Shown: positions 1,108 to 33,595 of the stretch, piece by piece
How the letters are laid out: each line of letters starts with the position of its first letter
Position numbering within the stretch: the first letter of the stretch is position 1
Virus record (IMG/VR): IMGVR_UViG_3300042308_001616
Span: 62,001 to 126,000 of that record
DNA: 64,000 nucleotides
Strand: one strand, 5' to 3'
The notes under the pieces: model-generated
The model's input: the letters and a program-made list of their open reading frames with translations, nothing else
The model's database searches: none
Told to the model about the DNA's origin: nothing
Program-made: the position numbers and the translations under genes

Positions 1108-1709
1108 TGGAAATTATAGAACCAAATCCAAGGCTATTAGAATATATAGCAGACGCATCATCATTATTTACTGACTTTGATGGTGCCCGTCGTGAGTTCA
1201 TTGAAAATGAAGAGTGGCATTATATACAATCCGAATTAGAACAAAACATATATCTTTTGAGTAGACTTGAAGAGAAAAAGTTACTACCTGAAAAGGTAGA
1301 CGTATTCGATTGTGGAATCGGTCTGGGTACTACTATGTTTGATCTTTATCTTCAGTCTAAAGATATGTTAGGGAAGAATTTTACATTTTCAGGAGTAGAG
1401 AAACATGATAGGTATTCAGACTTTCTTGAACAGAAATTATTACATTATTGGGATGGTAAACTAAATCTATATAGAGGCGATATAATGGATCGAGATTATA
1501 CTTCGTATAATATGGTTTATACTTATTCGCCTTTTAAAACTGTTGAAAAGTTAGAAGACTTTTATAAAAAAGTGGTTAGTGAGATATCATCCGGTTCTAT
1601 TATAATAGAGTCGAGGAATTGTGGAAAAGGTTTCGCTGAAACATTGTCACGTATACCTGGTCTCGAGGAGATAGAAGTAGATTGTATTTTTGTGTATAAA
1701 AAGAAATAA
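1107..1709 (+). CDS. Class I SAM-dependent methyltransferase
   Basis: VFDCGIGLG glycine-rich motif I, GVE motif II, GDIM, YTYSPF; start overlaps the GT stop. Confidence 0.75.
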   Translation: MEIIEPNPRLLEYIADASSLFTDFDGARREFIENEEWHYIQSELEQNIYLLSRLEEKKLLPEKVDVFDCGIGLGTTMFDLYLQSKDMLGKNFTFSGVEKHDRYSDFLEQKLLHYWDGKLNLYRGDIMDRDYTSYNMVYTYSPFKTVEKLEDFYKKVVSEISSGSIIIESRNCGKGFAETLSRIPGLEEIEVDCIFVYKKK

Positions 1710-1738
1710 AAAATGCCGACGTAATGTCGGCATTTTTT
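1708..1738. terminator. Bidirectional intrinsic terminator
   Basis: AAAAAATGCCGAC-gtaat-GTCGGCATTTTTT between convergent genes. Confidence 0.85.
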
Positions 1739-1739
1739 A

Positions 1740-2279
1740 TTAAACCATCTCCACTCGGAGTTTTTCATATTTTGTAAGTAGTGCATACATTCTTTCCCAC
1801 TCAGTATTAGGATCTTTCACAATTCGTTTACACCATTTATTGTTATTCAGATATTCTACAATCATTCCGGGTTTGATATCAGATTTACTTTTAGGTAACC
1901 AATACCTAGTTTTCTCAACAAATGAGAACGATACCCCATTATGTAGGTATGATTTGTTCTTAGAATCCGTATTGAACATAATAATACCCATTGGTCTTTC
2001 ATCACCACTATTGAATATTTTTCTCGGTTCAGTCTCACCTACGTATTTTATTATGGCACACTCTTGTGTATGTTCATCGAGTAATCTCAATACATCAAAT
2101 CGAAGTTCGTCGTTATCCACGGATTTATATGCTAAAACAGAGTCCTCGAAAATACCTTCATAATATCCCTGTATAGGTAATATTTGGTATTCTTTTGCCC
2201 AGAGAACCGATGTCAATGCGTCCATATTCTCAGAAGAGATTATGACATATGATGTATTAGGTTGTTCCAATGCGCTCAT
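1740..2279 (-). CDS. Hypothetical protein
   Basis: 179-aa ORF, TAATATATA motif just upstream, ends at the terminator. Confidence 0.75.
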   Translation of the reverse strand: MSALEQPNTSYVIISSENMDALTSVLWAKEYQILPIQGYYEGIFEDSVLAYKSVDNDELRFDVLRLLDEHTQECAIIKYVGETEPRKIFNSGDERPMGIIMFNTDSKNKSYLHNGVSFSFVEKTRYWLPKSKSDIKPGMIVEYLNNNKWCKRIVKDPNTEWERMYALLTKYEKLRVEMV

Positions 2280-2283
2280 GCGG

Positions 2284-3513
2284 TTATATATTAATATTCT
2301 CTGACGCCTTTTTAATTATACCAAATTCTTCATATAACCTAAGATTGAATATGGCTTCTATACTATCTCTGTGTCTAAAAGGTACTATGATACTATCATG
2401 TACGGTTGCCATTTTAACATCTGGCATTTGTTGCATCACATTCTTAACTATTCGGTTGAACAATAATGAAGATTCTGCCTTCTGTAATTCGTAAGCAAGA
2501 ACACGATAATCACCTTTTTCTTTTTTGTATAACTTTATGAAGTTGTGTATAGTTGGAAATAGTGAAGAGAAAACTTTATCTGCCTTACAACTATGAGCAT
2601 TCTTACCGAAAAGTACTCTATATGTCATCTCCTTTACTACCGATCTGTCATTATTACCGGTGGCATCCATTACATATTGGTAATAAATTCCATTTATAGT
2701 GAGATATTTGAAAAGTTCAAATTCATCCTGTTTTACCCATTTAGTACCGGAACTCTCAATCACTTTTGTGAGAAAGAGTGGCTGACTATTTTTTATGTCT
2801 ATCTCATGTGTAGGTTCTCCGTCTATGAGTAGGCACGTTTTGCGTATGAACGATTTAAGTATTGTGAAGTTTGTGTGCATCCTACCATAATTATCAAAAT
2901 GATAAAATATATGTTTGTCACCAATACACTCTACAGAATATACATTTCGGTTGTATATGTCTCCGTCAAAGTCTTTCAAATTATCTAAGTAGAATATTGC
3001 GGCAGATTGGTCTATCTCTACGTGAAATAAATCATCGACCAACTTCGCTTTAACATCTGCGTGTATAAGATCCGATCCTATATCGCCGTCTTCTACACGA
3101 GAGACACTATTCTTATATTTTCTGAGTAGTGTTTTGTCACGGTTTGAATACCTTAGTATCTTACCTTTTAGTACTTCGGAACAAATACTATATGATCGGG
3201 AGTTTCTTCCTGCTAAATAGTTTGACCTCATCTCTATCAATCGATTATCGACCAACCAGGATATGTAGTGGTTATAAAGATGGCCGTACTTCTCTTTCAA
3301 TATCGATGAATGAAGACTAAATTTGTTGTCTTTTTTGAAATAGTATTTTAGTATAAGACCGTGTATTATATCAACTAAGTAGGCCGTTTTTATTTTTTTA
3401 TTGTTGTGTAGTATAGTTTTACAATCAACTAAGTATTGCATTTTGACTGGAAGGAATTGTAGTGTACGTTCCTTCAATTCTAGTTTTTCTCTTATACTAG
3501 TTACCGATTCCAT
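2284..3513 (-). CDS. Family A polymerase-like protein (PolA / T7-RNAP superfamily palm) with N-terminal HTH-like region, no exonuclease
   Basis: YGRMH, EIDIKNSQP (motif A Asp), RSVVKEMTYRVLFG (motif B R..K...Y...G), TVHDSII (motif C). Confidence 0.65.
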   Translation of the reverse strand: MESVTSIREKLELKERTLQFLPVKMQYLVDCKTILHNNKKIKTAYLVDIIHGLILKYYFKKDNKFSLHSSILKEKYGHLYNHYISWLVDNRLIEMRSNYLAGRNSRSYSICSEVLKGKILRYSNRDKTLLRKYKNSVSRVEDGDIGSDLIHADVKAKLVDDLFHVEIDQSAAIFYLDNLKDFDGDIYNRNVYSVECIGDKHIFYHFDNYGRMHTNFTILKSFIRKTCLLIDGEPTHEIDIKNSQPLFLTKVIESSGTKWVKQDEFELFKYLTINGIYYQYVMDATGNNDRSVVKEMTYRVLFGKNAHSCKADKVFSSLFPTIHNFIKLYKKEKGDYRVLAYELQKAESSLLFNRIVKNVMQQMPDVKMATVHDSIIVPFRHRDSIEAIFNLRLYEEFGIIKKASENINI

Positions 3514-3685
3514 ACAACTCCTTTATTTTACTAACTCTATTCACTGCACGAAAAACACTAGTAATTGTGTAACTTTTAAAGTCTATTTTCAGACCTTCGA
3601 AGGTCTCACGTGTACATTCTGCACGTAGCGGTTTTATTTTCGAGGTTACTTCTACCTCTGACATATTTAGTTCTATGTTGTCCAT
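3497..3685 (-). CDS. Small hypothetical protein
   Basis: 62-aa ORF overlapping the start of the polymerase-like gene on the same strand. Confidence 0.5.
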   Translation of the reverse strand: MDNIELNMSEVEVTSKIKPLRAECTRETFEGLKIDFKSYTITSVFRAVNRVSKIKELYGIGN

Positions 3686-3719
3686 ATTTTTTATATGTTA
3701 TCGTTGTCGTTTGTTGCCA

Positions 3720-3744
3720 AAAAAACCCGAATGTGTCGGGTTTA
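3720..3744. terminator. Hairpin / probable terminator
   Basis: AAAACCCGA-atgtg-TCGGGTTT at the end of 3742..3939. Confidence 0.55.
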
Positions 3745-3939
3745 TATGTTGATGATGTTGTAATAAACATCTGGATACTTTATCTCATTTCTATCATTTG
3801 GATCGTATTTGAATCCTTTTTGATTCTTCTCGTCAAACAATCTGTTTGATTCGACAAGCTTCTCCATTGTAGGAGTTTTTGTTGGCTTTATAGACTGTAG
3901 CTCTCTGTGCCAGAAATCGTATCTCTCGTAGTCGTTCAT
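3742..3939 (-). CDS. Small hypothetical protein
   Basis: 65-aa ORF directly after 3943..5262 and followed by a hairpin. Confidence 0.5.
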   Translation of the reverse strand: MNDYERYDFWHRELQSIKPTKTPTMEKLVESNRLFDEKNQKGFKYDPNDRNEIKYPDVYYNIINI

Positions 3940-3942
3940 TTT

Positions 3943-5262
3943 CTATATTGTTTTTTCACCAATTTCTGGTTTTCCACCTGGTGTTGGTTTTTTCTTTTTC
4001 TTATCTGATGCACCTGCTTCAATTTCGGAATATACGTCTGGATAGACTTCACCTGCAGCGTCTGTGTCATATTTAATATCAAAGAAGTCTCCGAAGTCAA
4101 GTAGTCCTGCTCTGGCTAATTCAACCTCACTAGCTCTTCCGAGATGTTCGTCAACCATTCCGGATAGGTCATCAACGAATCTGTTGAATAAAGAAACTGT
4201 ACTATCTGTGAATACTCCTATTGGTCTTTTTTTCTTTTTGTTGAATGATCCAAGTATTACTTTGAATATGTACTCTAATTTACTATTTTCTTCCAAATAC
4301 TCTTTAGTTGTTCTATTATCAACCAACGATTTATTTATTCTGAATTTGTCTTTATCGAAAAATTCAGGTATGGTAAATTCAAAATCTAACAAATCTTCTT
4401 TGACTTCTGCCAGATAAAGGTTGTAAAGTCTACAAACTAAACTAAGGTATACCTCTTCACGGTTGTTACCTCTAATTTTAACATCACGTATTTGTATAGA
4501 TTGACAAAAGTTTAGAAAGTTTATCAATATAAGTGTGTATATCTCAACAAAGTCTGTTGAGTTTGTTTCACTAACTCTTTTATATAAAGGGTTTAGTAGT
4601 TCAAATGATGTATCACCTGAAGTGAGTCTGAATATTAGTTTTTCTACATTCCTCTGGAAATCTCCATTCATAAGAAAAGAAGATTCTGTTGCAGGGTTTA
4701 ACATTTTGTAGAAAAAGAATGTAAAGTTTTTCTCACCAAAAACATACTCGAGATCATCTTCACTGGTATTCAGAAAATACTTTATAGCCTCAATCATTCT
4801 TTCCGTCAGTCTTCCTTGAAATACTACCGGAATCATCTCAACATCAATCAGTCTGGCATATTCTGCTAACTCCTCTATGTTGAAATCATATTTTCCACTT
4901 TTATGTATTCCTGTTATAACAAGACCATTTTTGGGAATTCTATCATATTCGATATTGGCAGGTTGATTATCTGGAAAATACTCAAAACAAAACCACCATT
5001 TTTTGTTCAATAGAGATTTAACACGTGTGTCGAGTGATTTGAAGTATTCAACCCCTGGGTTGTAATAGTTCTGCATTGCTAAGTCTACAAGGTTGATTGG
5101 TTCACTACTTAGTGATTTTGGTTTTATCGTGAATTCTGTACCATTCCAGTTTACCCATATCTTACTACCCTGTATATCTTCGAGTACTATTAGTTCTTCA
5201 TTGAATAACGAGTTCAGTAATTGTTCACTTTCCGACTCGTTCATATTTATGAGTTTGGCCAT
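3943..5262 (-). CDS. ATP-dependent RNA-ligase-fold protein, probably catalytically inactive
   Basis: LEDIQGSKI aligns with ligase motif I (EKxxG[ST]N) with Lys replaced by Asp; FCFEYF, IPVVFQG and EKLIFR resemble the later motifs. Confidence 0.5.
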   Translation of the reverse strand: MAKLINMNESESEQLLNSLFNEELIVLEDIQGSKIWVNWNGTEFTIKPKSLSSEPINLVDLAMQNYYNPGVEYFKSLDTRVKSLLNKKWWFCFEYFPDNQPANIEYDRIPKNGLVITGIHKSGKYDFNIEELAEYARLIDVEMIPVVFQGRLTERMIEAIKYFLNTSEDDLEYVFGEKNFTFFFYKMLNPATESSFLMNGDFQRNVEKLIFRLTSGDTSFELLNPLYKRVSETNSTDFVEIYTLILINFLNFCQSIQIRDVKIRGNNREEVYLSLVCRLYNLYLAEVKEDLLDFEFTIPEFFDKDKFRINKSLVDNRTTKEYLEENSKLEYIFKVILGSFNKKKKRPIGVFTDSTVSLFNRFVDDLSGMVDEHLGRASEVELARAGLLDFGDFFDIKYDTDAAGEVYPDVYSEIEAGASDKKKKKPTPGGKPEIGEKTI

Positions 5263-5333: not shown

Positions 5334-7448
5334 ATGAAAAAGTTGATGATAATTGTACCACATCTATCTACCGGTGGACTTCCACAATACGTGGCTAAAC
5401 AAATAGAAATGTCGTGTGGTGAGTATGAAATATGGTGCGTTGAATGGGACAGTATAACTGGTGGTGTTCTTGTTGTACAACGGAACAAAATACAAAATCT
5501 TATTGGTACCGGACTCGTAACATTGGGAGAAGATAAAGATGAATTTTTACGATTATTAGATGATGTTTGTCCGGACATTATACATTTCCAAGAGATTCCG
5601 GAAACTTTTATACAGAGGACAATACTTGATGATGTTTATAAAGATGATAGACATTGGCAAATATTGGTGACGACTCACTCTTCGTATACAGAACCTTCTA
5701 ATATATCTTATGGTGCAGACAGATTTGTATTAGTTTCGGACTGGAGTAGGAGACGTTTTGCATCTGTATATGGTGACGATAGGTGTTCAATTTGGGAATA
5801 TCCTGTGGAAAAGAAGGTATTTGATAAAATTTCAGCGAAGAAGAAATTGGGATTTGAACTAGATAAGGTACATTTTCTACATGTTGGTTTATTCACACCT
5901 GGTAAAAATCAGAAATTGATTGTGGATGCTGCCAGATTATTACAATCGATGGATAATATACGAGTACACTTTGTGGGTAATCAAGCTGAAAATTTTAGGG
6001 ACTACTGGGAACCAATTATGGCAGACTTTCCGTTGAATTGTACTTGGCATGGCGAAAGACACAACGTTGATGATTTCTATAAAGCCGCGGATGTTTTTCT
6101 TTTTCCATCTCTATTCGAACTAAATCCACTTTCGTTGAAAGAGGCATCAGGATTTGGACTACCAATAGCACTCAACAAATTAGAAACATATGATGGTGCG
6201 TGGGACAATTGCGTTGATTTACATATGGATCCGGAAGGTGCGTCACGTGTTATGTGTGAAATGGTGGAATCGGTTAGTGGTTTTTTTGACGGAACACTAT
6301 ATGGTGAGTCTACTAAAATGACAGATATTGTAAGGAGATTAGATCCTTTGATAAGTATAAACTTCATAAATGGACCTTATGTAGAAGTCAATAATGCACC
6401 TGGAGAAGAATTTGACTTAACAATAACTGATAGAAAAAGTGGATTTGTTGTTTATGGAACAACAATTGGGAATGGATGTTGGGCACGTGCTAATTTGATG
6501 TATGTTAGAGATTGGAGAATAAGATTGGTACGTAAATCGGATGGTAAGGAATTTATAAGAGATTTCGATCCTAATGGTAAAAGAGTTTTTATATCTCTGG
6601 AATCTAGGTCAATTGGTGATACTCTAGCTTGGTTTCCACAGGTTGAAGAGTTTAGAAAGAAACATGATTGTAAAATCGTATGTTCTACTTTTTGGAATGA
6701 ACAACTAAGTGGTCAATATCCTGAGATAGAGTTTGTTTCACCCGGTAGTGTTGTTGATAACATATATGCTATGTTTAGTATTGGGTGGTTTTTTGATGGT
6801 GATTCGTATTGTCCGAGAAGACATCCACGTGACTTCAAAAATCTTCCATTGGGACAGACTGCAGCAGACATACTCAACATTGAGTATAAACAGGAGAGAG
6901 CTAGGTTGGATGTATCGAATGTTATAAAATCACGTAAGGTTGGACTTGGAATTCACTCCACTGCACAAACCAAATATTGGAACAATCCAACCGGATGGCA
7001 GGATGTTACTAATTTTCTAACTAAGATAGGATATGAGGTTATTATACTATCCAATGAGGGTGATGGTTATATGGGTAATAACTATCCGTCGGGTGCGTCT
7101 GTATTACCATCTGGTAGTTTTGATCGACTCAAAGAAGAGATGGTTAGTTGTGAACTTTTTATTGGTATAGGATCAGGTCTAAGTTGGTTATCATGGACTC
7201 TTGGAGTACCTACCGTACTCATATCGGGTTTCAGTCGTCCTGAATCTGAGTTTGAGGGAGATGGTGTTCTTAGAATATTCAATGAAAGTAGTTGTAATGG
7301 ATGTTACAATAGATACAAATTCAACGCAGGTGATTGGAATTGGTGTCCGGACCACGCAGGAACGGAAAGACAATTTGAGTGTACAAAGTCGATAACCGGA
7401 AGACATGTCATAGCAAGAATGATTGAAGAGGGTTTTGTTCATATATAA
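5334..7448 (+). CDS. Fusion of a GT4 glycosyltransferase and a TibC/AAH-like protein O-heptosyltransferase
   Basis: N-half: HVGLFTPGKNQ, ADVFLFPSLFELNPLSLKEA (GT4). C-half: ISLESRSIGDTLAWFP, GIHSTAQTKYWNNP, FIGIGSGLSWLSW, and Cys cluster CNGC...WNWCP...FECTKSI. Start moved from 5265 to MKKLMII. Confidence 0.85.
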   Translation: MKKLMIIVPHLSTGGLPQYVAKQIEMSCGEYEIWCVEWDSITGGVLVVQRNKIQNLIGTGLVTLGEDKDEFLRLLDDVCPDIIHFQEIPETFIQRTILDDVYKDDRHWQILVTTHSSYTEPSNISYGADRFVLVSDWSRRRFASVYGDDRCSIWEYPVEKKVFDKISAKKKLGFELDKVHFLHVGLFTPGKNQKLIVDAARLLQSMDNIRVHFVGNQAENFRDYWEPIMADFPLNCTWHGERHNVDDFYKAADVFLFPSLFELNPLSLKEASGFGLPIALNKLETYDGAWDNCVDLHMDPEGASRVMCEMVESVSGFFDGTLYGESTKMTDIVRRLDPLISINFINGPYVEVNNAPGEEFDLTITDRKSGFVVYGTTIGNGCWARANLMYVRDWRIRLVRKSDGKEFIRDFDPNGKRVFISLESRSIGDTLAWFPQVEEFRKKHDCKIVCSTFWNEQLSGQYPEIEFVSPGSVVDNIYAMFSIGWFFDGDSYCPRRHPRDFKNLPLGQTAADILNIEYKQERARLDVSNVIKSRKVGLGIHSTAQTKYWNNPTGWQDVTNFLTKIGYEVIILSNEGDGYMGNNYPSGASVLPSGSFDRLKEEMVSCELFIGIGSGLSWLSWTLGVPTVLISGFSRPESEFEGDGVLRIFNESSCNGCYNRYKFNAGDWNWCPDHAGTERQFECTKSITGRHVIARMIEEGFVHI

Positions 7449-7480
7449 AAAAATCCGAGATAAATTATCTCGGATTTTTT
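7447..7480. terminator. Bidirectional intrinsic terminator
   Basis: AAAAAAATCCGAGATAA-a-TTATCTCGGATTTTTT between convergent genes. Confidence 0.85.
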
Positions 7481-8675: not shown

Positions 8676-8742
8676 GTTTATTCTTTTTTGTCTTATATAT
8701 TATTAAAACGTGGTTGGACTCATGATAGTTAATATATAAAAC

Positions 8743-12371: not shown

Positions 12372-15300
12372 TTGGCTAGAAATCCTAAATACCAGATACG
12401 TAACCTCTCTACTGACGGTTATGGAAGATTAGTACAAGTTGTAAATGGAGTTTATTACGATGGATTTGGTAATATTTTAAGTATTGGTAGTGTTGGTAGT
12501 TCAGGAATCATTGGCGGTTCGTCGGGAACATCGGGTTTAAGTGGAAACTCTGGGTCATCGGGTTCATCCGGAACATCAGGGCTAAGTGGAAACTCTGGGT
12601 CATCCGGAACATCGGGTTCTTCTGGATACTCAGGAACATCAGGTTCAAGTGGAACGAGTGGTGTTTCGGATAAGTATAAGACTACAACGGTTCACACAAT
12701 GCCAGTTCCGAGTGTGGATGACATTATATTATTAGAATCTCTTGATACAGGTCTTGCATACACAGTAGGACAATCAATAATATTGGCGGAATCTGCGTAC
12801 GATTATCTGGAAGGTATTGTTCAAAGTTATAGTCCAATAACGGGTGATATGTACGTTATTGTCAAATATGTCGTTGGTTCGCCTGATGGGCCAGATTTTA
12901 CGATAAATATTGATGGAACAACTGGGTCATCCGGAACATCTGGGTCATCCGGAATTAGTGGTTCATCCGGATCTTCCGGAACACGTGGTAGTTCAGGTTC
13001 GTCCGGTTCTTCTGGTATTTCCGGTTCGTCCGGAACTTCGGGGTCTTCCGGAGAAAGTGGTTCTTCTGGTATTTCCGGTTCTTCTGGTATTTCCGGTTCG
13101 TCCGGAACTTCGGGGTCTTCCGGAGAAAGTGGTTCTTCTGGTATTTCCGGTTCTTCTGGAACTTCAGGTTCGTCAGGAGAAAGTGGTTCCTCTGGAACTT
13201 CTGGGTCTTCCGGTTCTTCTGGAGCTTCTGGAACTTCAGGTTCGTCAGGAGAAAGTGGTTCCTCTGGAACTTCTGGGTCTTCCGGTTCTTCTGGAGCTTC
13301 TGGAACTTCTGGGTCATCAGGAACGTCCGGTTCTTCTGGGTCATCAGGTTCATCAGGAACTTCTGGGTCATCTGGTGAAAGTGGATCATCCGGAACTTCT
13401 GGTTCATCCGGAACTTCTGGTTCTTCTGGATCCAGTGGAACAGGATTTGACACAATTTCAAATCCATCTGATAACAGATTATTGACATCGGATGGAACTA
13501 CCAACGCAGCGGTTGCTGAAAGTAATCTAACATTTGATGGTAGTTTGTTAACAATGATTGGTTCTTCCAATTTTGGAACATCTTCTGGAACACAAAATCT
13601 ATATGGTAGTGTAATTTCCAATGATAGTTTCTCCATTGGGACACAACAATTTTTCCCACAAGGTAATAACGGATTTTCAGTCAATGAAAACTTTGACGCC
13701 AGTAATAGCACATCTCAAACGGCTTATCATTTTACATCTGGCTCAAACACAAAAAATATAGTATTTACTTTAGCAAAAACCGGAGAATATACGACAGTTT
13801 TTGGTACAGATGGTAGTTCAACTTCCAATAAATTTGTAATAGGCTCAGAAACATCGAATACCGTTTTTCAATTCAAAAGTGGATTGGGAATACAACCAAT
13901 TAACTTAGACGGCGGTTCTGTGATGTTTGAGGTGGCTACAAATTCATTATTTGCACCAAATATACCATCCGGTACAACCGAGACGGATATATTAGTCAGA
14001 GATGGTAGTGGTTATATTACATACAGAAGTGATTTAAGTTTATCAGGAACGTCTGGGTCTTCCGGTAGTGCAGGTTCATCAGGAACATCCGGTTCTTCTG
14101 GGTCTTCCGGTTCATCTGGATCATCAGGAACATCAGGAACATCAGGAACGTCTGGGTCTTCCGGTTCATCTGGATCATCAGGTTCTTCCGGAACATCAGG
14201 AACGTCTGGGTCTTCCGGTAGTGCAGGTTCATCAGGAACATCCGGTTCATCTGGATCATCAGGTTCTTCCGGAACATCAGGAACGTCTGGGTCTTCTGGG
14301 TCTTCCGGTTCATCTGGAACATCAGGTTCATCTGGAACGTCTGGTTCTTCTGGGTCTTCCGGTTCATCAGGAACGTCCGGTTCTTCTGGGTCTTCCGGTT
14401 CTTCTGGAACATCAGGTTCATCAGGAACGTCTGGTTCTTCCGGTTCATCTGGAACGTCTGGTTCTTCTGGGTCTTCCGGTTCATCAGGAACGTCCGGTTC
14501 ATCAGGAACGTCTGGGTCTTCCGGTTCTTCTGGAACATCAGGTTCTTCTGGTTCATCTGGAACTTCTGGGTCTTCCGGTAGTGCAGGTTCATCAGGAACG
14601 TCTGGGTCTTCCGGTTCATCAGGAACATCTGGTTCGTCTGGATCAACAGGTTCGTCTGGGTCATCAGGATCAGCAGGAAGTTCAGGTTCTACCGGGTCTT
14701 CGGGAACGTCAGGAAGTTCAGGTTCATCAGGAACAAGAGGTTCGTCTGGGTCATCAGGTTCTACCGGATCTTCGGGGTCTTCTGGATCAGCAGGAACATC
14801 AGGATCTTCCGGTACATCTGGTTCGTCTGGGTCAGCAGGAACATCTGGTTCGTCTGGGTCAGCAGGAACATCTGGTTCGTCTGGGTCTTCCGGTACATCA
14901 GGTTCGACAGGATCATCCGGAACAAGTGGTGCACAAGGACCACAGGGTATATCCGCAGGTCAGATATACTATTTCAATATGTCTATGACAGCTTCTGTAA
15001 ATGGATATAGGTCGCTTTCAACAACACCACTTCCAAATGGTGGCACATATTCAATAGAAACACTTACGGGGAATGAGTCAGGACATTTAGTAGAGACTTT
15101 TATGACAGATCCATTAGGATTTTCTATCATTCCTGGTGGAACACAAAGGTTTCACTTACATTTTTTAAAGGGTGCGGTTGGTGATGATATAGAGGCTTAT
15201 GTGAGTATAAGACTTAGTGATAGTGTAGGTGTTCCTATTGGACCTACGTTATCAAGCAACAAACAATACATTGGATGGAATGACTCAACAACTAATGTAG

Positions 15301-18300
15301 AGGTACTAACCGATTTAACACTTCCAACGACCGGAATAGATCCAACCAACAGAATGCTTGTAAGCATATATTTGGATAACAAGGATTCGAATTCAAGAAC
15401 GGTTCAATTTCACACAGAAGGAACGGATGATTATTCTTATGTCATAACGTCTGTTGGTGTTGTGAATGGAACTTCTGGGTCTTCCGGTTCAAGTGGTTCT
15501 ACAGGAACTTCCGGATCTTCTGGCTCATCCGGAACTTCTGGAACTTCTGGAACGTCTGGTTCTTCCGGTAGTGCAGGATCATCAGGTACAAGAGGTTCAT
15601 CCGGGTCATCAGGAACTTCTGGTTCATCGGGAACTTCTGGTTCGTCTGGAACATCTGGAACTTCTGGTTCGTCTGGAACATCAGGTTCGTCTGGTAGTTC
15701 TGGTTCATCAGGAAGTTCTGGTTCGTCCGGAACATCTGGAACATCTGGATCTTCTGGTTCGTCTGGAACATCTGGATCTTCTGGTAGTTCTGGTTCATCA
15801 GGAACTTCTGGTTCGTCTGGAACTTCTGGTTCGTCTGGAACTTCCGGTACTTCGGGTTCTTCCGGTACTTCGGGTTCATCTGGAACTTCCGGTACTTCGG
15901 GTTCTTCTGGAACTTCTGGAACATCTGGTTCATCAGGTACTTCGGGCTCTTCCGGAACATCTGGTTCATCAGGTACTTCGGGCTCTTCCGGAACATCTGG
16001 TTCTTCTGGTAGTTCCGGTACGAGAGGATCATCGGGTTCTTCCGGAACATCTGGGTCATCCGGAACATCTGGGTCATCCGGAACGTCTGGTTCTTCCGGT
16101 TCATCTGGAACTTCTGGAACATCCGGTTCTTCCGGTTCGAGTGGGTCGTCCGGGTCTTCCGGGTCTTCTGGAACATCTGGTTCTTCCGGAACGTCTGGTT
16201 CTTCCGGTAGTTCCGGTACGAGAGGATCATCCGGTTCTTCTGGATCATCGGGAACTTCCGGGGTAAATGGAATCGACTCTGCGAGTTTTGAGTACACTTA
16301 TAGTACAACGACCACTGCGTCGGATCCTGGATCAGGTTTCTTCAGACTAAACAACCTAACTATGGGTAGTGCGACCTCACTTTACATAGACAGATTTGAC
16401 AGAAATGGTAATAACGACTTACAAAACTTCTTCAGTTCGCTTACAAACTACGGTTCGACAAATAGACGAGGTTTCATAAAGATAACTAAACAGAACGACC
16501 TTACATGGTTTCAGACATATGAATTTAGTGCGACAACCGATAACACAGGATGGTGGACGATTACCATAAATAACGTAATACTCGATGCCAACTTTACAAA
16601 CAACGATTTGTGTTTTATCAGTTTCAATGTTTCAGGACCAACGGGAACAAGTGGGAGTTCAGGAACATCTGGTTCTTCCGGTTCATCTGGAACTTCCGGT
16701 ACTTCGGGTTCTTCTGGAACTTCTGGAACATCTGGTTCATCAGGTACTTCGGGCTCTTCCGGAACATCTGGTTCATCTGGAACTTCCGGTTCTTCCGGAA
16801 CGTCTGGTTCTTCTGGTAGTTCCGGTACGAGAGGATCATCGGGTTCTTCCGGAACATCTGGGTCATCAGGAACATCTGGTTCGAGTGGGTCTTCAGGAAC
16901 ATCTGGTTCTTCCGGTTCATCTGGAACTTCTGGTTCGAGTGGGTCTTCAGGAACATCTGGTTCTTCCGGTTCATCTGGAACTTCTGGGCCATCCGGGTCT
17001 TCTGGGTCATCTGGAACATCTGGTTCTTCCGGGTCATCTGGAACATCTGGTTCTTCCGGGTCATCTGGAACATCTGGTTCTTCCGGGTCATCTGGAACAT
17101 CTGGTTCTTCCGGGTCTTCTGGGTCATCTGGAACATCTGGTTCTTCCGGGTCTTCTGGGTCATCTGGAACATCTGGTTCTTCCGGTAGTGCAGGATCATC
17201 AGGTACAAGAGGTTCATCCGGGTCATCAGGAACATCTGGTTCTTCCGGGTCTTCAGGAACATCTGGTTCGAGTGGTTCTTCCGGCACTTCTGGATTACTA
17301 AGTCTAACAGGTTCAACTGATAATGGTGTTATAACTCTCAATGGTTCCATTCCAAATGCTATAGTTGAAAGTAATCTTACATTTGATGGTAGTATACTAA
17401 ATGTGACTGGTCGTATTATTGCATCCGCATCAACTTCTACGGACCTTTTAAGACTAACACAAGTAGGAACAGGAAACGCTTTTGTTGTAGAGGATAGTAC
17501 GAATCCGGACATTACCCCGTTTGTTATACAGGGTGATGGAAAAGTCGCCATAGGAACTTCTTCCACCGTTGCAAACTTAGAGGTTAGAGCCAATGGTGCA
17601 AACGGTATATTACTGGGTCAAGATCTTGCAGCGAGTGGACAATCGAGTAGACTTTTCTTCAGCAACGGAACAGACGGACAACACATAGCAATACTCAATT
17701 CAAATAACGGAGGATTCGATTTCAGAACTCTATCAACTGCGAATGTTTCCACTGGAACTCAAAGGATGACAATTGCAGCAGGTGGTGATGTCTACATAGC
17801 ACAGTCCCTCGGAATAAACCAACCAACACCTACTGCAAAAATACATGTGGTACCTGGTTCAACACAATCTGGTCTTATAGTTGCAGGTAATAGTGATCAA
17901 GATATGGTCAGGATAACACAGATAGGAACAGGTAACGCAATTATTGTTGAAGATAACACGAATCCAGACTCAACACCTTTCGTCGTTGATGCATCAGGAA
18001 ACATAGGTGCAGGAACCGCATCACCATCAACAAAATTACACGTATTCTCTACGACGAGTGGTGCTATAAGAATAGTCGACGGAACACAGCAGAATGGATA
18101 CGTACTTACATCCGATGCAAACGGGTTGGCAACATGGCAAGTATCATCTGGTGGTGGTTCATCACTGAGTGGTACAATCAACTACGTTCCATTCTACAAA
18201 ACAACCACAACACTATCATCTACGAGTTCGATACAGGTCTCTGGTGATACAGTCGGAATAGGAGTTTCATTCTCAAACACCGGTGGACCGAGTACAGACT

Positions 18301-28386: not shown

Positions 28387-29331
28387 TTATTTTACATTTA
28401 CCAATGTGTTGCTGCCGTTACCAAGCACGGTCTCAGAGTTGTGACCATCCCATTTCTCAATCTTTTTGTATTCTACAAACAATGGAGTAAGTTTTTGTTG
28501 TGTAAGTTCCATCGCCTTAGCTTTTGCAGATGCGTTGATTACCGTTTCTGCGGAGTCGGCTCTTGCAACAGCAACTTTTCTCTCACCATCTGCGACTGCA
28601 GCGATTGCTTGTTGTTTAGAAGCCTCTGCTTGTTGCACAGATTTAGTTTTAGCGATGATTGCTTCTTGAAGTGCCTCTGGTGGAATGATGTTTGATCTCA
28701 TCTGTGATACTATGAACCACTTAGATAATCTTAAGTTACATTCTGCAACAATTGCAATTTCAAATGCTTGACGGTGTCCGAAGATTGAATCAACCTCCCA
28801 GGTATTAGCAACGTCATTTACTGCACCAACAATCGCGTTCTTTAGCCAACCTTGCTCTACTTCTTTGATAGGCAAACGTAGGTTCACAAACATATCTCCA
28901 ACTGCGGTAGGTTTCAAAGAGTAGTTGAACGAAGGTTTGATGTCGGCCGGGAAACCACCTTTGGTAATTACTTGTTGTTGGTCGAACTCTATGTGCTGCT
29001 GGAACGTAGGAAACTCATATAAGTTCTCTGTCCAGGTGTTGTAAACAACCCAACCTGTTTTGTACTGATACTTAGAAACACCTCTATTGTCCCCAGTAAG
29101 GTTCACTTTAATTCCGACGTGACCCGCATCTACTCTTTCGATAGCGAACGGCTGGATGAATGCGAAGATAAGTAACCCGACACCGGCAACGATACCGATT
29201 GTGACCGACTTCCGACCCTCGGCCTTCTGTGTAGTGTTGTTGTAACCTGCATCTTGTATCGTCCTGATACCTGTGATGATTTTGTAGGCAGCGAAACCTA
29301 AGGCCACTAGTGCCAAAATTGTAGTTATCAT
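28387..29331 (-). CDS. SPFH / band-7 / prohibitin-family membrane protein
   Basis: Two N-terminal TM segments, RVDAGHVGIKVNL, and an AIIAKTKSVQQAE coiled coil. Confidence 0.9.
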   Translation of the reverse strand: MITTILALVALGFAAYKIITGIRTIQDAGYNNTTQKAEGRKSVTIGIVAGVGLLIFAFIQPFAIERVDAGHVGIKVNLTGDNRGVSKYQYKTGWVVYNTWTENLYEFPTFQQHIEFDQQQVITKGGFPADIKPSFNYSLKPTAVGDMFVNLRLPIKEVEQGWLKNAIVGAVNDVANTWEVDSIFGHRQAFEIAIVAECNLRLSKWFIVSQMRSNIIPPEALQEAIIAKTKSVQQAEASKQQAIAAVADGERKVAVARADSAETVINASAKAKAMELTQQKLTPLFVEYKKIEKWDGHNSETVLGNGSNTLVNVK

Positions 29332-33481: not shown

Positions 33482-33595
33482 AAAGTATATATAAAGTAAC
33501 ATTTACTCCTTTACTCTTATAAATATATATAATTTTTGTTTTTAGTATATCAATTTTTTGTTCAGAAAACCTGACAGTGTGAAAATTTTATTAAC

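What the first reader, a model, noticed from the sequence alone, without database searches (positions are those of the whole stretch)
2284..3513. Compact family-A-polymerase-like protein without proofreading domain
Seen: all three palm motifs (DIKNSQP, R..K...Y...FG, VHDS) in 409 aa, an N-terminal HTH-like segment, and no exonuclease. A gp44-type clamp loader suggests a separate T4-like replisome, so this is unlikely to be the replicase. Established: divergent PolA/T7-RNAP relatives such as the TV-Pol group have been proposed as primase-polymerases. Inference: it may act as an origin-binding initiator/primase or a small single-subunit RNA polymerase.
Basis: partly seen in the sequence, partly recalled or inferred. 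Interest (0 to 1): 0.6.

Follow-up and report, generated by a model that had tools for sequence, protein, structure and literature searches.

The report
Compact winged-helix family-A-like polymerase in phage
A freshwater giant phage carries a real, very small DNA-polymerase-I-like enzyme with no proofreading part and a DNA-binding-type domain in front; it belongs to a large, unnamed family that small mobile elements and phages of Bacteroidota appear to use to start copying their own DNA.

Summary
ORF 2284-3513 (-) encodes 409 aa carrying every hallmark of the PolA/T7-RNAP superfamily: T/DxxGR (R211), motif A (D239), motif B (R290, K294, Y298, F302-G303) and motif C (H372-D373). These residues are invariant or nearly so across 104 diverse relatives. 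The AlphaFold model (pLDDT 95) shows an N-terminal winged helix on a ~270-aa polymerase core. That core matches solved family-A polymerases at Z 12-13.5. There is no exonuclease domain.

No Pfam or NCBIfam model detects the protein, yet it has about 3,200 relative clusters at 50% identity. Relatives occur in phages of 20-735 kb and in 29 of 301 sampled Flavobacteriaceae genomes. There the usual core is integrase, HTH_17 (excisionase-like), polymerase. That is the context described for TV-Pols.

The phage has its own PolB and clamp loader, and complete relatives have a DnaB-type helicase and usually a Toprim protein. So this protein is not the replicase. Residues at the sugar-selecting positions look like a DNA polymerase, not an RNA polymerase.

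The 3720-3744 hairpin is a terminator. The downstream gene has a SAM-lyase fold, not an SSB fold.

Most likely this is an auxiliary DNA primase-polymerase or initiator of the TV-Pol/divPolA2 kind. Its activity is untested.

The parts
2284..3513 (-). Gene for the 409-aa winged-helix + minimal family-A-like polymerase (P0001)
   Evidence: ORF and translation; 3,203 relative clusters; AF2 model pLDDT 95.4; fold matches to PolA enzymes
3139..3465 (-). N-terminal winged-helix domain (residues ~17-125), with a conserved aromatic pattern Y76-G77..Y80..Y83..[YFW]86-L87 and Y108
   Evidence: VIA-align matches to Rpa2 WH Z 7.2, ORC WH 7.0, MCM8 WH 6.6, MarR-type; column conservation
2314..3135 (-). Minimal polymerase core (residues ~127-400): short helical thumb region, palm and compact fingers
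   Evidence: Z 13.5 apPol, 13.4 Aquifex Pol I, 12.8 Pol nu, 12.7 T7 DNAP and Klenow, 12.0 T7 RNAP and mtRNAP; Foldseek E ~3e-4 to apPOL and KlenTaq
2881..2895 (-). T/DxxGR motif (D207-N-Y-G210-R211), followed by H213-T-N-F-T; R211 aligns with Klenow R668
   Evidence: R211 and H213 invariant, D207 in 103 of 104, G210 in 99 of 104; in register with Pol I 'TGRVHTS'
2779..2805 (-). Motif A (E237-I-D239-I-K-N-S-Q244-P): catalytic Asp D239 = Klenow D705; Q244 at the steric-gate position (E710)
   Evidence: D239 in 104 of 104, Q244 in 102 of 104; profile-profile alignment to a 17-sequence Pol I profile
2605..2646 (-). Motif B / O-helix (R290-xxx-K294-xxx-Y298-xxx-F302-G303) = Klenow R754, K758, F762, Y766, G767
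   Evidence: K294 invariant; Y/F298 in 99 of 104; F302 in 96 of 104; hhalign to E. coli Pol I
2392..2406 (-). Motif C (T370-V-H372-D373-S374) = Klenow H881, D882, E883
   Evidence: H372 and D373 invariant; alignments
3497..3685 (-). 62-aa ORF that opens the transcription unit and overlaps the polymerase start; poorly conserved
   Evidence: ORF list; detected in only 3 of 86 related loci, and many loci leave under 170 nt upstream of the polymerase
1740..2279 (-). 179-aa gene 4 nt downstream (same transcription unit): SAM hydrolase/lyase-like fold, not an OB-fold SSB
   Evidence: AF2 model pLDDT 89; Z 12.2 to T3 SAM hydrolase 7ock_L, 7.8 to phage SAM lyase 6zm9; adjacent in 81 of 86 loci of the same phage clade
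3719..3743 (-).
   Evidence: Stem-loop plus U7 directly after the stop of ORF 3742-3939; -11.4 kcal/mol, z -3.5
1705..1741 (-). Strong terminator (perfect 16-bp stem, T-run) closing the polymerase unit
   Evidence: Terminator scan and inverted repeat I11
3943..5262 (-). Upstream 439-aa gene, RNA-ligase-like (a lead only). Syntenic with the polymerase across the phage clade but separated from it by the terminator
   Evidence: Atlas feature hits to PF09414 RNA_ligase clusters, 0.93-0.94; syntenic in 73 of 86 loci; invariant 'EDxQGSKI'

Best explanation
The gene encodes an active, proofreading-less, template-directed polymerase of the PolA/T7-RNAP superfamily, reduced to a ~270-aa core. An N-terminal winged-helix domain is packed against that core. 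This much is shown by sequence, conservation and predicted fold.

The protein belongs to a very large, unannotated family confined, as far as sampled, to Bacteroidota phages and integrative elements. In the chromosomal elements the gene occupies the slot after integrase and an HTH_17 (excisionase-like) gene, and no other replication gene was recognised in the representative flanking genes scanned. From this I infer that the family's basic job is to start, and shortly extend, DNA synthesis on the element's own DNA. That is a TV-Pol-type primase-polymerase or initiator. The winged helix would hold DNA, either as a surrogate thumb or as a targeting module.

The residues that select the sugar look like those of a DNA polymerase: Gln at the steric gate, Tyr at Klenow F762, Phe at Klenow Y766, Gln at Q849. 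So the product is most likely DNA (inferred).

This T4-like giant freshwater phage has its own PolB and clamp loader. Its complete relatives have a DnaB-type helicase and usually a Toprim primase. The enzyme is therefore an auxiliary, not the replicase. It is transcribed in a short unit flanked by terminators, together with a SAM-lyase-like (anti-restriction type) gene. It most likely provides initiation or re-start synthesis at particular sites.

My odds: active non-replicative PolA-type polymerase of the TV-Pol/divPolA2 kind, about 0.85. DNA rather than RNA product, about 0.7. Priming or initiation as its specific role in this phage, about 0.4.
For: Catalytic core:
- R211, H213, D239, K294, H372 and D373 are invariant in 104 members at 27-59% identity.
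- All motifs align in register with Pol I: R668, R682, D705, E710, R754, K758, F762, Y766, Q849, H881, D882.
- The AF2 model has pLDDT 95.4 and pTM 0.91.
- PolA enzymes are the top structural matches at Z 12.7-13.5; Foldseek E ~3e-4.
- The winged helix matches at Z 6.5-7.2.

Family size and range:
- 3,203 clusters.
- No Pfam, NCBIfam or PADLOC model matches; PHROGs gives only noise (E>=0.058).
- 29 of 301 Flavobacteriaceae genomes have a homologue.
- 271 relatives were confirmed in genome contigs, and the best 79 loci are all Bacteroidota.
- P0302 and P0305 are full-length homologues, hhalign 99.9%.

Context in mobile elements and small phages:
- 16 of 20 Flavobacteriaceae loci have a tyrosine integrase nearby, typically int (416 aa), HTH_17 (87-93 aa), Pol. 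Four have a large serine recombinase. Left flanks are housekeeping genes and right flanks are cargo.
- P0302 sits in an int...HTH_17...Pol element.
- Small phages of 19.6 and 27 kb carry it with no other polymerase annotated or detected in the part seen.
- This matches the published TV-Pol context (PMC2579912) and the demonstrated dNTP primase activity of CCPol-MP (PMC7581432).

Not the replicase:
- PolB is in the same genome.
- DnaB_C in 8 of 8 and Toprim_2 in 6 of 8 larger relatives.
- Clamp-loader-like AAA+ in the window.

Long-term retention:
- The gene is syntenic in about 80 related phage loci. Its divergence tracks that of its neighbours, r 0.48-0.57.
Against: - No biochemical data exist for any member of this family.
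- A profile of the family does not hit the TV-Pol-bearing phage Ma-LMM01. It reaches the published divPolA2 group only weakly: no HMM hit, hhalign prob 65%, E 6e-5.
- In this phage there is no integrase, helicase, iteron set or AT-rich origin-like feature next to the gene.
- The clade already has a DnaG-type primase, so a second primase is not obviously needed.
- The winged-helix surface residues are strongly conserved across distant members. That fits a structural or DNA-clamping role better than variable, sequence-specific origin recognition.
- The steric-gate assignment rests on a low-probability profile alignment (prob 5%, E 0.0075). An alternative alignment shifts the register by two residues. 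I could not superpose coordinates.
Confidence: 0.5

Rival explanations
1. It is a miniature single-subunit RNA polymerase (T7 or N4 RNAPII-like) that transcribes a subset of phage genes or makes RNA primers.
For: - Motif C is H-D-S as in T7 RNAP, not H-D-E.
- The only sequence-level PDB hit of the family profile is N4 RNAPII gp16, at motifs B and C, E 0.3.
- T7 RNAP and yeast mtRNAP match the model at Z 12.0, close to the DNA polymerases.
- The authors of divPolA2 raised the same possibility for that look-alike family (PMC11348598).
- No T7-like RNAP (PF00940) was found in the genome, though the control genomes did not ring either.
Against: - Gln is at the steric-gate position in 102 of 104 members, where T7-like RNAPs have Gly.
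- Phe is at the T7 Y639 position in 96 of 104, so there is no hydroxyl to read the 2'-OH.
- Tyr/Phe occupies the Klenow F762 position, where RNAPs have Met.
- GRxHT and Q344 (= Q849) are Pol-I signatures.
- DNA polymerases score slightly higher, Z 12.7-13.5, and N4 RNAPII gp16 scores only 7.9.
- A 270-aa core has no room for a promoter-specificity loop or an RNAP N-terminal domain.
- The integrase/HTH_17/Pol elements need replication, not their own transcription.
- The divPolA2 group does show RNAP-like motifs (GGRMY, K-MIMT-RIYY) that this family lacks.
Confidence: 0.17
2. It is a repair, gap-filling or lesion-bypass DNA polymerase. It may work with the upstream ligase-like protein to mend phage DNA (or nucleic acid ends) damaged by host defences.
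For: - Pol-I-like active-site residues without proofreading.
- The phage has a separate replisome.
- Synteny with an RNA-ligase-like gene in 73 of 86 loci and with a SAM-lyase-like anti-restriction gene in 81 of 86, so the neighbourhood looks like counter-defence.
- divPolA2 was also suggested to be a repair polymerase (PMC11348598).
Against: - The synteny is confined to one phage clade. Distant members are lone genes, often on the strand opposite to both flanks.
- A terminator separates the ligase-like gene from the polymerase unit.
- The ligase-like protein lacks a canonical KxDG/KxHG motif I.
- The chromosomal relatives sit in the replication slot of integrative elements, next to integrase and excisionase rather than repair genes.
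Confidence: 0.2
3. It is the catalytic half of a two-protein PolA-SSB primase like CCPol-MP, with the adjacent small gene product as the ssDNA-binding partner.
For: - The closest biochemically tested analogue, CCPol, needs the adjacent small protein MP to prime (PMC7581432, PMC10061031).
- The 179-aa gene follows after 4 nt and is adjacent in 81 of 86 loci.
- A 62-aa ORF overlaps the polymerase start.
Against: - The 179-aa protein folds like T3 SAM hydrolase/lyase (Z 12.2), not an OB fold.
- The 62-aa ORF is found in only 3 of 86 loci, and many loci have no room for it.
- Distant members have no conserved small neighbour.
- There is no helicase in the unit.
- The N-terminus is a winged helix rather than a remnant of the exonuclease domain.
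Confidence: 0.04

Closest known systems
TV-Pol family (Iyer, Abhiman & Aravind 2008, PMC2579912)
   Same: - Minimal PolA-superfamily core of 400-600 aa with the beta-hairpin Arg, two catalytic Asp and fingers RxxxK.
- Never linked to a nuclease domain.
- A subset has an extra N-terminal globular domain.
- Found in phages and in mobile elements next to lambda-type integrases or resolvases, with Bacteroidetes examples listed in the paper.
- Coexists with the host's or virus's normal replication enzymes.
- Predicted primase-polymerase.
   Different: - I could not show a direct sequence link to a named TV-Pol. The family profile does not hit phage Ma-LMM01, and the paper's alignment file is not held.
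- The paper predicts an all-helical N-terminal domain; here the domain is a winged helix (helices plus a beta wing).
- No D5-type helicase is linked here.
divPolA2 of barbaviruses and Vibrio phages (PMC11348598; AUR84708)
   Same: - About 430 aa: an N-terminal globular domain plus palm and fingers, with no exonuclease domain and no canonical thumb.
- Encoded in addition to a regular PolB, in variable neighbourhoods.
- Nearly the same spacing from the GR Arg to the motif C Asp (162 vs 166 residues).
- These proteins are the next-best structural matches in BFVD after true family members, E 1e-8 to 1e-6, ahead of canonical PolAs.
- hhalign prob 65%, E 6e-5 over 187 columns, in the right register.
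   Different: - Different motif signatures. divPolA2 has GGRMY, YDFKAFETS, K-MIMT-RIYY and FDE, which are RNAP-like in places. This family has GRxHT, IDIxNSQP, K-xxx-Y-xxx-FG and VHDS, which are Pol-I-like.
- The family HMM does not find divPolA2.
- The hosts seen for divPolA2 are Proteobacteria (Vibrio; Rheinheimera and Aeromonas phages); this family was found only in Bacteroidota.
CCPol-MP primase of SCCmec (PMC7581432; PolA-SSB pairs, PMC10061031)
   Same: - A mobile-element PolA that has lost proofreading and sits beside site-specific recombinase genes.
- Shown to prime with dNTPs, which makes priming by a PolA-type active site credible.
   Different: - CCPol is recognisably Pol-I-like in sequence and keeps three exonuclease-domain helices.
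- It needs an OB-fold partner (MP) and is followed by a helicase.
- Here there is no OB-fold neighbour, no helicase, a winged helix at the N-terminus, and no match to PF00476.
Phage N4 RNAPII (gp15 + gp16; PDB 6DT7)
   Same: - Described by its authors as the smallest T7-like RNAP (from my own knowledge of that paper).
- gp16 is 404 aa and gives the only sequence-level PDB hit of the family profile, at motifs B and C.
   Different: - The hit is very weak (E 0.3) and structural similarity is lower (Z 7.9) than to the DNA polymerases.
- N4 RNAPII is a heterodimer (from my own knowledge).
- It has Tyr at the Y639-equivalent position (seen in the alignment), where this family has Phe.
Bacterial DNA polymerase I polymerase domain (Klenow, KlenTaq)
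   Same: - Same fold (Z 12.7-13.4).
- Residue-for-residue equivalents of R668, R682, D705, R754, K758, F762, Y766, Q849, H881 and D882.
   Different: - About 140 residues shorter: 162 vs 214 residues from the GR Arg to the motif C Asp.
- No 3'-5' or 5'-3' exonuclease.
- Glu710 is replaced by Gln, Tyr766 by Phe and Glu883 by Ser.
- A winged helix precedes the core.
- It is invisible to Pfam PF00476.

Membership tests
PolA / T7-RNAP polymerase superfamily | T/DxxGR motif with the conserved Arg on a beta-hairpin before the palm | tested here: met
   D207 (103 of 104), G210 (99 of 104), R211 (104 of 104). Aligns with Pol I TGRVHT. Strands 204-206 and 212-214 in the model.
PolA / T7-RNAP polymerase superfamily | Motif A and motif C catalytic aspartates | tested here: met
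   D239 and D373 are invariant in 104 members and align with Klenow D705 and D882.
PolA / T7-RNAP polymerase superfamily | Motif B O-helix RxxxK...[FY]...[YF]G | tested here: met
   R/K290, K294 (invariant), Y/F298, F302, G303; aligned to R754, K758, F762, Y766.
PolA / T7-RNAP polymerase superfamily | Right-hand fold similar to solved members | tested here: met
   Z 13.5 to 12.0 for apPol, Pol I, Pol nu, T7 DNAP, T7 RNAP and mtRNAP over residues ~133-401. Foldseek prob 1.00.
Family A DNA polymerases as delimited by Pfam PF00476 | Match to the curated DNA_pol_A model | tested here: not met
   No hit at E<=10 for the protein. No PF00476 hit among the matches at E<=0.1 for any of 104 members. None in the genome.
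TV-Pol (Iyer 2008) | Minimal core with thumb, Arg hairpin, two Asp and fingers RxxxK; no fused or linked nuclease | tested here: met
   Motifs as above. 409 aa with no nuclease domain. No nuclease domain found in the neighbouring ORFs within about 5 kb. The bi-helical thumb itself is only inferred from helices 127-142 and 152-162.
TV-Pol (Iyer 2008) | Linkage to integrase, resolvase or transposase, or to a D5-like helicase, in mobile elements or viruses | tested here: met
   Met for relatives: tyrosine integrase in 16 of 20 and serine recombinase in 4 of 20 Flavobacteriaceae loci, and in P0302 and P0305. Not met in the window itself, which has no recombinase or helicase nearby.
TV-Pol (Iyer 2008) | Detectable sequence relationship to a named TV-Pol | tested here: inconclusive
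   The family HMM gave no match at E<=1 in phage Ma-LMM01, which the paper says carries a TV-Pol. The paper's alignment is not held. TV-Pols are very diverse, so this does not exclude membership.
TV-Pol (Iyer 2008) | Combined primase and DNA polymerase activity | not testable with these tools
   Needs enzyme assays. Among proposed TV-Pols only CCPol-MP has been tested (PMC7581432).
divPolA2 (PMC11348598) | About 430-aa protein: N-terminal globular domain plus PolA palm and fingers, no exonuclease, extra to a regular PolB, variable neighbourhood | tested here: met
   Architecture. PolB in the genome. Lone gene in variable contexts in distant members.
divPolA2 (PMC11348598) | Sequence homology to the AUR84708 group, with its motif signature | tested here: inconclusive
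   hhalign A1 vs A2 prob 65%, E 6e-5. No HMM hit. Motif signatures differ. Best read as a related but separate family.
PolA-SSB primases (CCPol-MP) | Adjacent small OB-fold ssDNA-binding partner (and usually a helicase) in the operon | tested here: not met
   The downstream 179-aa protein has a SAM hydrolase/lyase fold. The upstream 62-aa ORF is not conserved. No helicase domain nearby.
T7-like single-subunit RNA polymerases | Gly at the steric-gate position and Tyr at the Y639 position (ribose selection); match to PF00940 | tested here: not met
   Q244 in 102 of 104 and F302 in 96 of 104. No PF00940 hit. The register at the steric gate rests on a weak alignment.

The most novel reading that the evidence does not exclude
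The winged helix plus 270-aa core may be a self-sufficient, single-chain initiator. It would bind a site on double- or single-stranded DNA through the winged helix and start DNA chains de novo with dNTPs, with no partner protein and no zinc finger. That would make it the smallest known primase-polymerase of the PolA lineage. Bacteroidota integrative elements would use it as their only replication protein, and megaphages would have co-opted it as an origin- or restart-specific starter alongside a T4-type replisome.
Probability: 0.25. Interest if true: 0.75.

Novelty: new member of a known kind. Interest (0 to 1): 0.5.

Why it matters
The protein belongs to a very large family: about 3,200 clusters at 50% identity, about 10% of the Flavobacteriaceae genomes sampled, and phages from 20 to 735 kb. 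No Pfam or NCBIfam model names the family. The records seen label its members 'hypothetical', 'putative DNA polymerase I' or, wrongly, 'DNA methyltransferase'.

The family marks a class of Bacteroidota integrative elements (integrase, HTH_17, polymerase) that move between genera. Copies 92-94% identical occur in five genera.

If it primes, it would be a second, simpler example after CCPol-MP of a PolA-type active site starting DNA chains. It would also define the minimal working core of this polymerase lineage, which matters for polymerase evolution and for enzyme engineering.

For annotating giant phages, it shows that a second, non-replicative polymerase is a stable part of this freshwater T4-like megaphage clade.

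Tried and rejected
- Pfam, PHROGs, PADLOC and NCBIfam scans of the protein, and Pfam on 104 relatives, gave nothing usable.
- The sequence search of the PDB gave only noise for the single protein. The family profile gave a weak N4 RNAPII gp16 hit, E 0.3.
- I considered the 3720-3744 hairpin as an origin or binding site. I rejected this: it is a terminator, and no iterons or repeats lie around the gene.
- I considered the 179-aa neighbour as an MP-like SSB partner. I rejected this after folding it: it has a SAM-lyase fold.
- I considered the 62-aa upstream ORF as a partner. It is not conserved.
- I considered the enzyme as the phage's only primase. The 248-kb record lacks DnaB_C, Toprim_2 and Toprim_4. 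But all 8 larger relatives have DnaB_C, and 6 of 8 have Toprim_2. The record is probably incomplete, so I dropped the idea.
- A direct link to named TV-Pol and divPolA2 proteins by HMM gave no hits. hhalign to single Pol I, T7 DNAP and T7 RNAP sequences was weak: E 0.1, 0.007 and 0.5.
- The search for related loci on genome contigs with the broad alignment failed for lack of a conserved word. I repeated it with a narrower alignment.
- The TV-Pol paper's supplementary alignment is not held.
So I could not superpose on a ternary complex to fix the steric-gate residue.
- No RNA run holds the locus, so expression timing could not be examined.
- No alternative genetic code was needed.
Full report
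**What is there.**
The finding's coordinates match an ORF on the minus strand, 2284-3513, 409 aa, ATG start. It lies in a short unit:
- An intrinsic terminator closes the upstream genes. It is an 8-bp stem plus a U7 tract directly after the stop of ORF 3742-3939, -11.4 kcal/mol, z -3.5.
- A 62-aa ORF (3497-3685) overlaps the polymerase start.
- The polymerase gene follows.
- After a 4-nt gap comes a 179-aa ORF (1740-2279).
- A perfect 16-bp terminator lies at 1705-1741.

No iterons or other repeats surround the gene.

**The genome.**
The window is bases 62,001-126,000 of a 248,751-bp IMG/VR virus record. It carries T4-like genes:
- gp23 capsid, gp20 portal, gp15 and large terminase;
- an AAA+ clamp-loader-like gene;
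- a Dam methylase and an RNase II/R.

A family-B DNA polymerase lies at about 175.6-177 kb of the record. No PF00476 or PF00940 match exists in the record.

The record lacks DnaB_C and Toprim matches. But all 8 larger relatives (385-735 kb, including LR756501-4 and LR756511) encode a ~445-aa DnaB-type helicase. Six of the 8 have a Toprim_2 match, a primase-sized ORF (325-339 aa) in four of them. So the record is probably a fragment, and the clade has a full T4-type replisome.

The DNA occurs in lake and river metagenomes from 13 studies. No RNA run holds it.

**The protein.**
No Pfam, NCBIfam or PADLOC model matches it, PHROGs gives only noise (E>=0.058), and the PDB sequence search gives only noise. 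Yet the word search found 1,418 relatives. The exhaustive search found 3,203 clusters at E<=1e-3, mostly 370-450 aa.

I aligned 104 diverse members at 27-59% identity (A1). The invariant residues are R211, H213, D239, Y278, K294, E347, H372 and D373. Residues at least 90% conserved include D207, G210, T217, E237, N242-S243-Q244-P245, F302-G303, L343-Q344, S348, T370 and S374.

These are the hallmarks of the PolA/T7-RNAP superfamily:
- T/DxxGR: D207..G210-R211, continuing as 'GRxHT' as in Pol I;
- motif A: E-x-D239;
- motif B: R290-xxx-K294-xxx-Y298-xxx-F302-G303;
- motif C: H372-D373-S374.

None of the 104 members matches PF00476.

**Fold.**
AlphaFold2 with A1 gave pLDDT 95.4 and pTM 0.91. Foldseek against the PDB returned family-A DNA polymerases (apPOL, KlenTaq, Klenow, T7 DNAP) at E about 3e-4.

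The all-against-representatives aligner gave these scores over residues ~133-401:

| Solved structure | Z |
|---|---|
| apPol | 13.5 |
| Aquifex Pol I | 13.4 |
| Pol nu | 12.8 |
| T7 DNAP and Klenow | 12.7 |
| T7 RNAP and yeast mtRNAP | 12.0 |
| N4 RNAPII gp16 | 7.9 |

Residues ~20-125 match winged helices: Rpa2 WH 7.2, ORC WH 7.0, MCM8 WH 6.6, and MarR/IclR types. There is no exonuclease domain. The high pTM suggests that the two domains form one rigid unit.

The winged helix carries strongly conserved aromatic residues: Y76-G77, Y80, Y83, position 86 and Y108. That suits a conserved DNA-gripping or structural role better than variable, sequence-specific recognition.

**Residue equivalences.**
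I compared A1 by profile-profile alignment with E. coli Pol I and with a 17-sequence Pol I profile. The statistics are weak (E 0.1 and 0.0075; prob 5%), but every motif falls in register:

| This protein | Klenow |
|---|---|
| R211 | R668 |
| R224 | R682 |
| D239 | D705 |
| Q244 | E710 (steric gate) |
| R290 | R754 |
| K294 | K758 |
| Y298 | F762 |
| F302 | Y766 |
| Q344 | Q849 |
| H372, D373, S374 | H881, D882, E883 |

An alignment to T7 DNAP shifts motif A by two residues. That would put L246 (L/F/M in the family) at the gate. Either way the residue is bulky, not the Gly of T7-like RNAPs. The T7 Y639 position holds Phe, and the position where RNAPs have Met holds Tyr/Phe.

From established knowledge of E710, F762 and Y766 in Klenow and of G542 and Y639 in T7 RNAP, I infer a dNTP-using enzyme. 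I could not superpose coordinates, because the model is not exposed to scripts.

**Relatives and their contexts.**
Within the same megaphage clade, 80 IMG/VR loci and LR756502 have 50-65% identity. The order there is conserved: 439-aa gene, variable small ORFs, polymerase, 179-aa gene, then an opposite-strand glycosyltransferase. The counts are 73, 81 and 75 of 86 loci. The polymerase's divergence tracks that of its neighbours, r 0.48-0.57. So it is a stably inherited gene. The 62-aa ORF is not conserved: it appears in 3 loci, and many loci have under 170 nt upstream.

More distant members are lone genes, often on the strand opposite to both flanks:
- LR756501 and LR756504;
- a large phage contig;
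- a 27-kb small-phage contig, between the lysis/structural and early modules;
- the 19.6-kb Pinkberry virus.

The Pinkberry homologue is mis-annotated 'DNA methyltransferase' (hhalign to A1 99.3%, E 1.8e-20). No other polymerase is annotated in that genome.

Two bacterial-context members are full-length homologues, hhalign 99.9%. One lies in a Flavobacterium sedimenticola prophage near a serine recombinase. The other lies in an integrase...HTH_17...polymerase element.

I searched 301 Flavobacteriaceae genomes with the family profile. Twenty-nine carry a homologue of 410-520 aa. In 20 fetched loci:
- 16 have a tyrosine integrase (Arm-DNA-bind_5 + Phage_int_SAM_5 + Phage_integrase);
- the typical order is int (416 aa), HTH_17 (87-93 aa), Pol;
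- 4 have a large serine recombinase;
- left flanks are housekeeping genes;
- right flanks are cargo: DUF6119, TonB receptor/FUR/P-type ATPase, DNA methylase, WYL.

No helicase or primase was recognised in the representative flanking genes scanned.

A scan of species-representative genomes confirmed 271 relatives. The best 79 loci are all Bacteroidota: Flavobacteriaceae, Chitinophagaceae, Cytophagales, Bacteroidales including Prevotella and Alistipes, Pedobacter and Chryseobacterium. Copies 92-94% identical occur in five genera, which indicates recent transfer.

A quick tree separates three groups:
- a large-phage clade holding the window's protein (support 99);
- a small-phage clade (98);
- a Flavobacteriaceae element clade (95).

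The tree was not run to completion and has several long branches.

**Neighbours.**
I folded the 179-aa protein with 35 homologues (pLDDT 89). Residues 5-124 match T3 SAM hydrolase/lyase at Z 12.2 and a phage SAM lyase at Z 7.8. It is not an OB fold, so the CCPol-MP type of pairing is not supported.

The 439-aa upstream protein resembles RNA ligases by Atlas features, 0.93-0.94, which is a lead only. Its invariant 'EDxQGSKI' departs from the canonical ligase motif I.

**Comparison with the literature.**
- *TV-Pols* (PMC2579912) are minimal PolA-superfamily polymerases of transposons and viruses. Some have an N-terminal domain and sit next to integrases or resolvases, with Bacteroidetes examples. 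They were predicted to be primase-polymerases. The features and contexts found here fit that description. But the family profile does not hit Ma-LMM01, and the paper's alignment is not held.
- *CCPol-MP* (PMC7581432, PMC10061031) shows that a PolA active site can prime with dNTPs, but it needs an OB-fold partner.
- *divPolA2* (PMC11348598) is the closest published look-alike in phages. It is about 430 aa, with an N-terminal globular domain, no exonuclease, an extra copy beside PolB, a variable neighbourhood and unknown function. BFVD ranks such proteins right after true family members. hhalign of the two family profiles gives prob 65%, E 6e-5. The motif signatures differ, and the HMM finds nothing.
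- The 2023 reclassification of PolAs into 19 subfamilies (PMC10201439) does not mention Bacteroidetes, winged helices, integrases or TV-Pols in its main text. So I saw no sign that it covers this group.
- BFVD holds one 44%-identical member labelled 'Putative DNA polymerase I'. Atlas clusters of 474-541 aa from Bacteroidota match the whole model at TM 0.76-0.79.

**Conclusion.**
Shown:
- a real, conserved gene;
- a PolA-superfamily active site under strong constraint;
- a winged helix plus a minimal core, with no proofreading domain;
- not the replicase;
- membership of a large Bacteroidota phage and mobile-element family;
- chromosomal members that sit in integrase/excisionase-like/polymerase cores.

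Inferred:
- DNA rather than RNA synthesis;
- a primase-polymerase or initiator role for the family;
- an auxiliary initiation or restart role in this megaphage.

Rivals that remain open are a miniature RNA polymerase (about 0.17) and a repair or gap-filling polymerase (about 0.2). The two-protein PolA-SSB model is essentially excluded for this locus.

I file it as a new member of a known kind (TV-Pol/divPolA2-like compact PolA). It is of moderate interest because the family is huge, unnamed and biochemically untouched.

No non-standard genetic code was used.

Noticed in passing
window:1740-2279 (-): The 179-aa protein has a T3-type SAM hydrolase/lyase fold (residues 5-124, Z 12.2) plus an extra ~55-aa C-terminal part. 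It looks like an anti-restriction gene and is translationally coupled to the polymerase gene.
   Followed up: partly
window:3943-5262 (-): The 439-aa protein looks like an RNA ligase by Atlas features, yet no Pfam hit was found. Its invariant 'EDxQGSKI' sits where Rnl2-type ligases have the catalytic 'EKxHGxN'. It may be an atypical or inactive nucleotidyltransferase.
   Followed up: partly
window:5287-5305, 7434-7452, 8728-8741, and ~3688-3700 (-): An A-rich box 'ATATATAAAA(A)' lies within a few bases of several start codons, with no Shine-Dalgarno sequence. It could be a phage promoter box or a Bacteroidota-style translation start region.
   Followed up: no
window:7442-7486 and 1705-1741: Near-perfect palindromes with flanking A/T runs sit between convergent or adjacent genes. 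They are likely bidirectional terminators.
   Followed up: no
window:8743-12324 and 12372-19673 (+): Two very long ORFs (1,193 and 2,433 aa) carry collagen-like GSSGTSG repeats. Local GC rises to 0.46-0.48, against ~0.34 elsewhere. They are probably fibre or decoration proteins.
   Followed up: no
window:38038-39972 (+); 28387-29331 (-); 31352-33502 (-): The phage encodes an RNase II/R (RNB + CSD + S1), an SPFH/Band 7 protein and a DUF7487 protein within the structural region.
   Followed up: no
whole record G000 (248,751 bp): CheckV rates the record 90% complete. Yet it lacks the DnaB-type helicase and Toprim primase that its 385-735-kb relatives carry, so it is probably a fragment of a much larger genome.
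   Followed up: partly
L095:1695-2762 (OP947160.1, Pinkberry virus): The CDS annotated 'DNA methyltransferase' is a homologue of this polymerase (hhalign 99.3%, E 1.8e-20). That 19.6-kb genome also lists a separate 'DNA polymerase exonuclease subunit' and no other polymerase.
   Followed up: partly
L134-L138, L146 (Algibacter, Arcticimaribacter, Lacinutrix, Polaribacter, Winogradskyella): Polymerase copies 92-94% identical to the query occur in different Flavobacteriaceae genera. This indicates a recently spreading integrase/HTH_17/polymerase element with varied cargo (metal transport, methylase, DUF6119).
   Followed up: partly
L008:3893-4669 (metagenomic large-phage contig): A Thg1-like 3'-5' polymerase gene lies about 3 kb from the polymerase homologue in one distant phage. 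Together with the ligase-like neighbour here, this hints at nucleic-acid-end repair genes in these regions, but the link is not shown.
   Followed up: no
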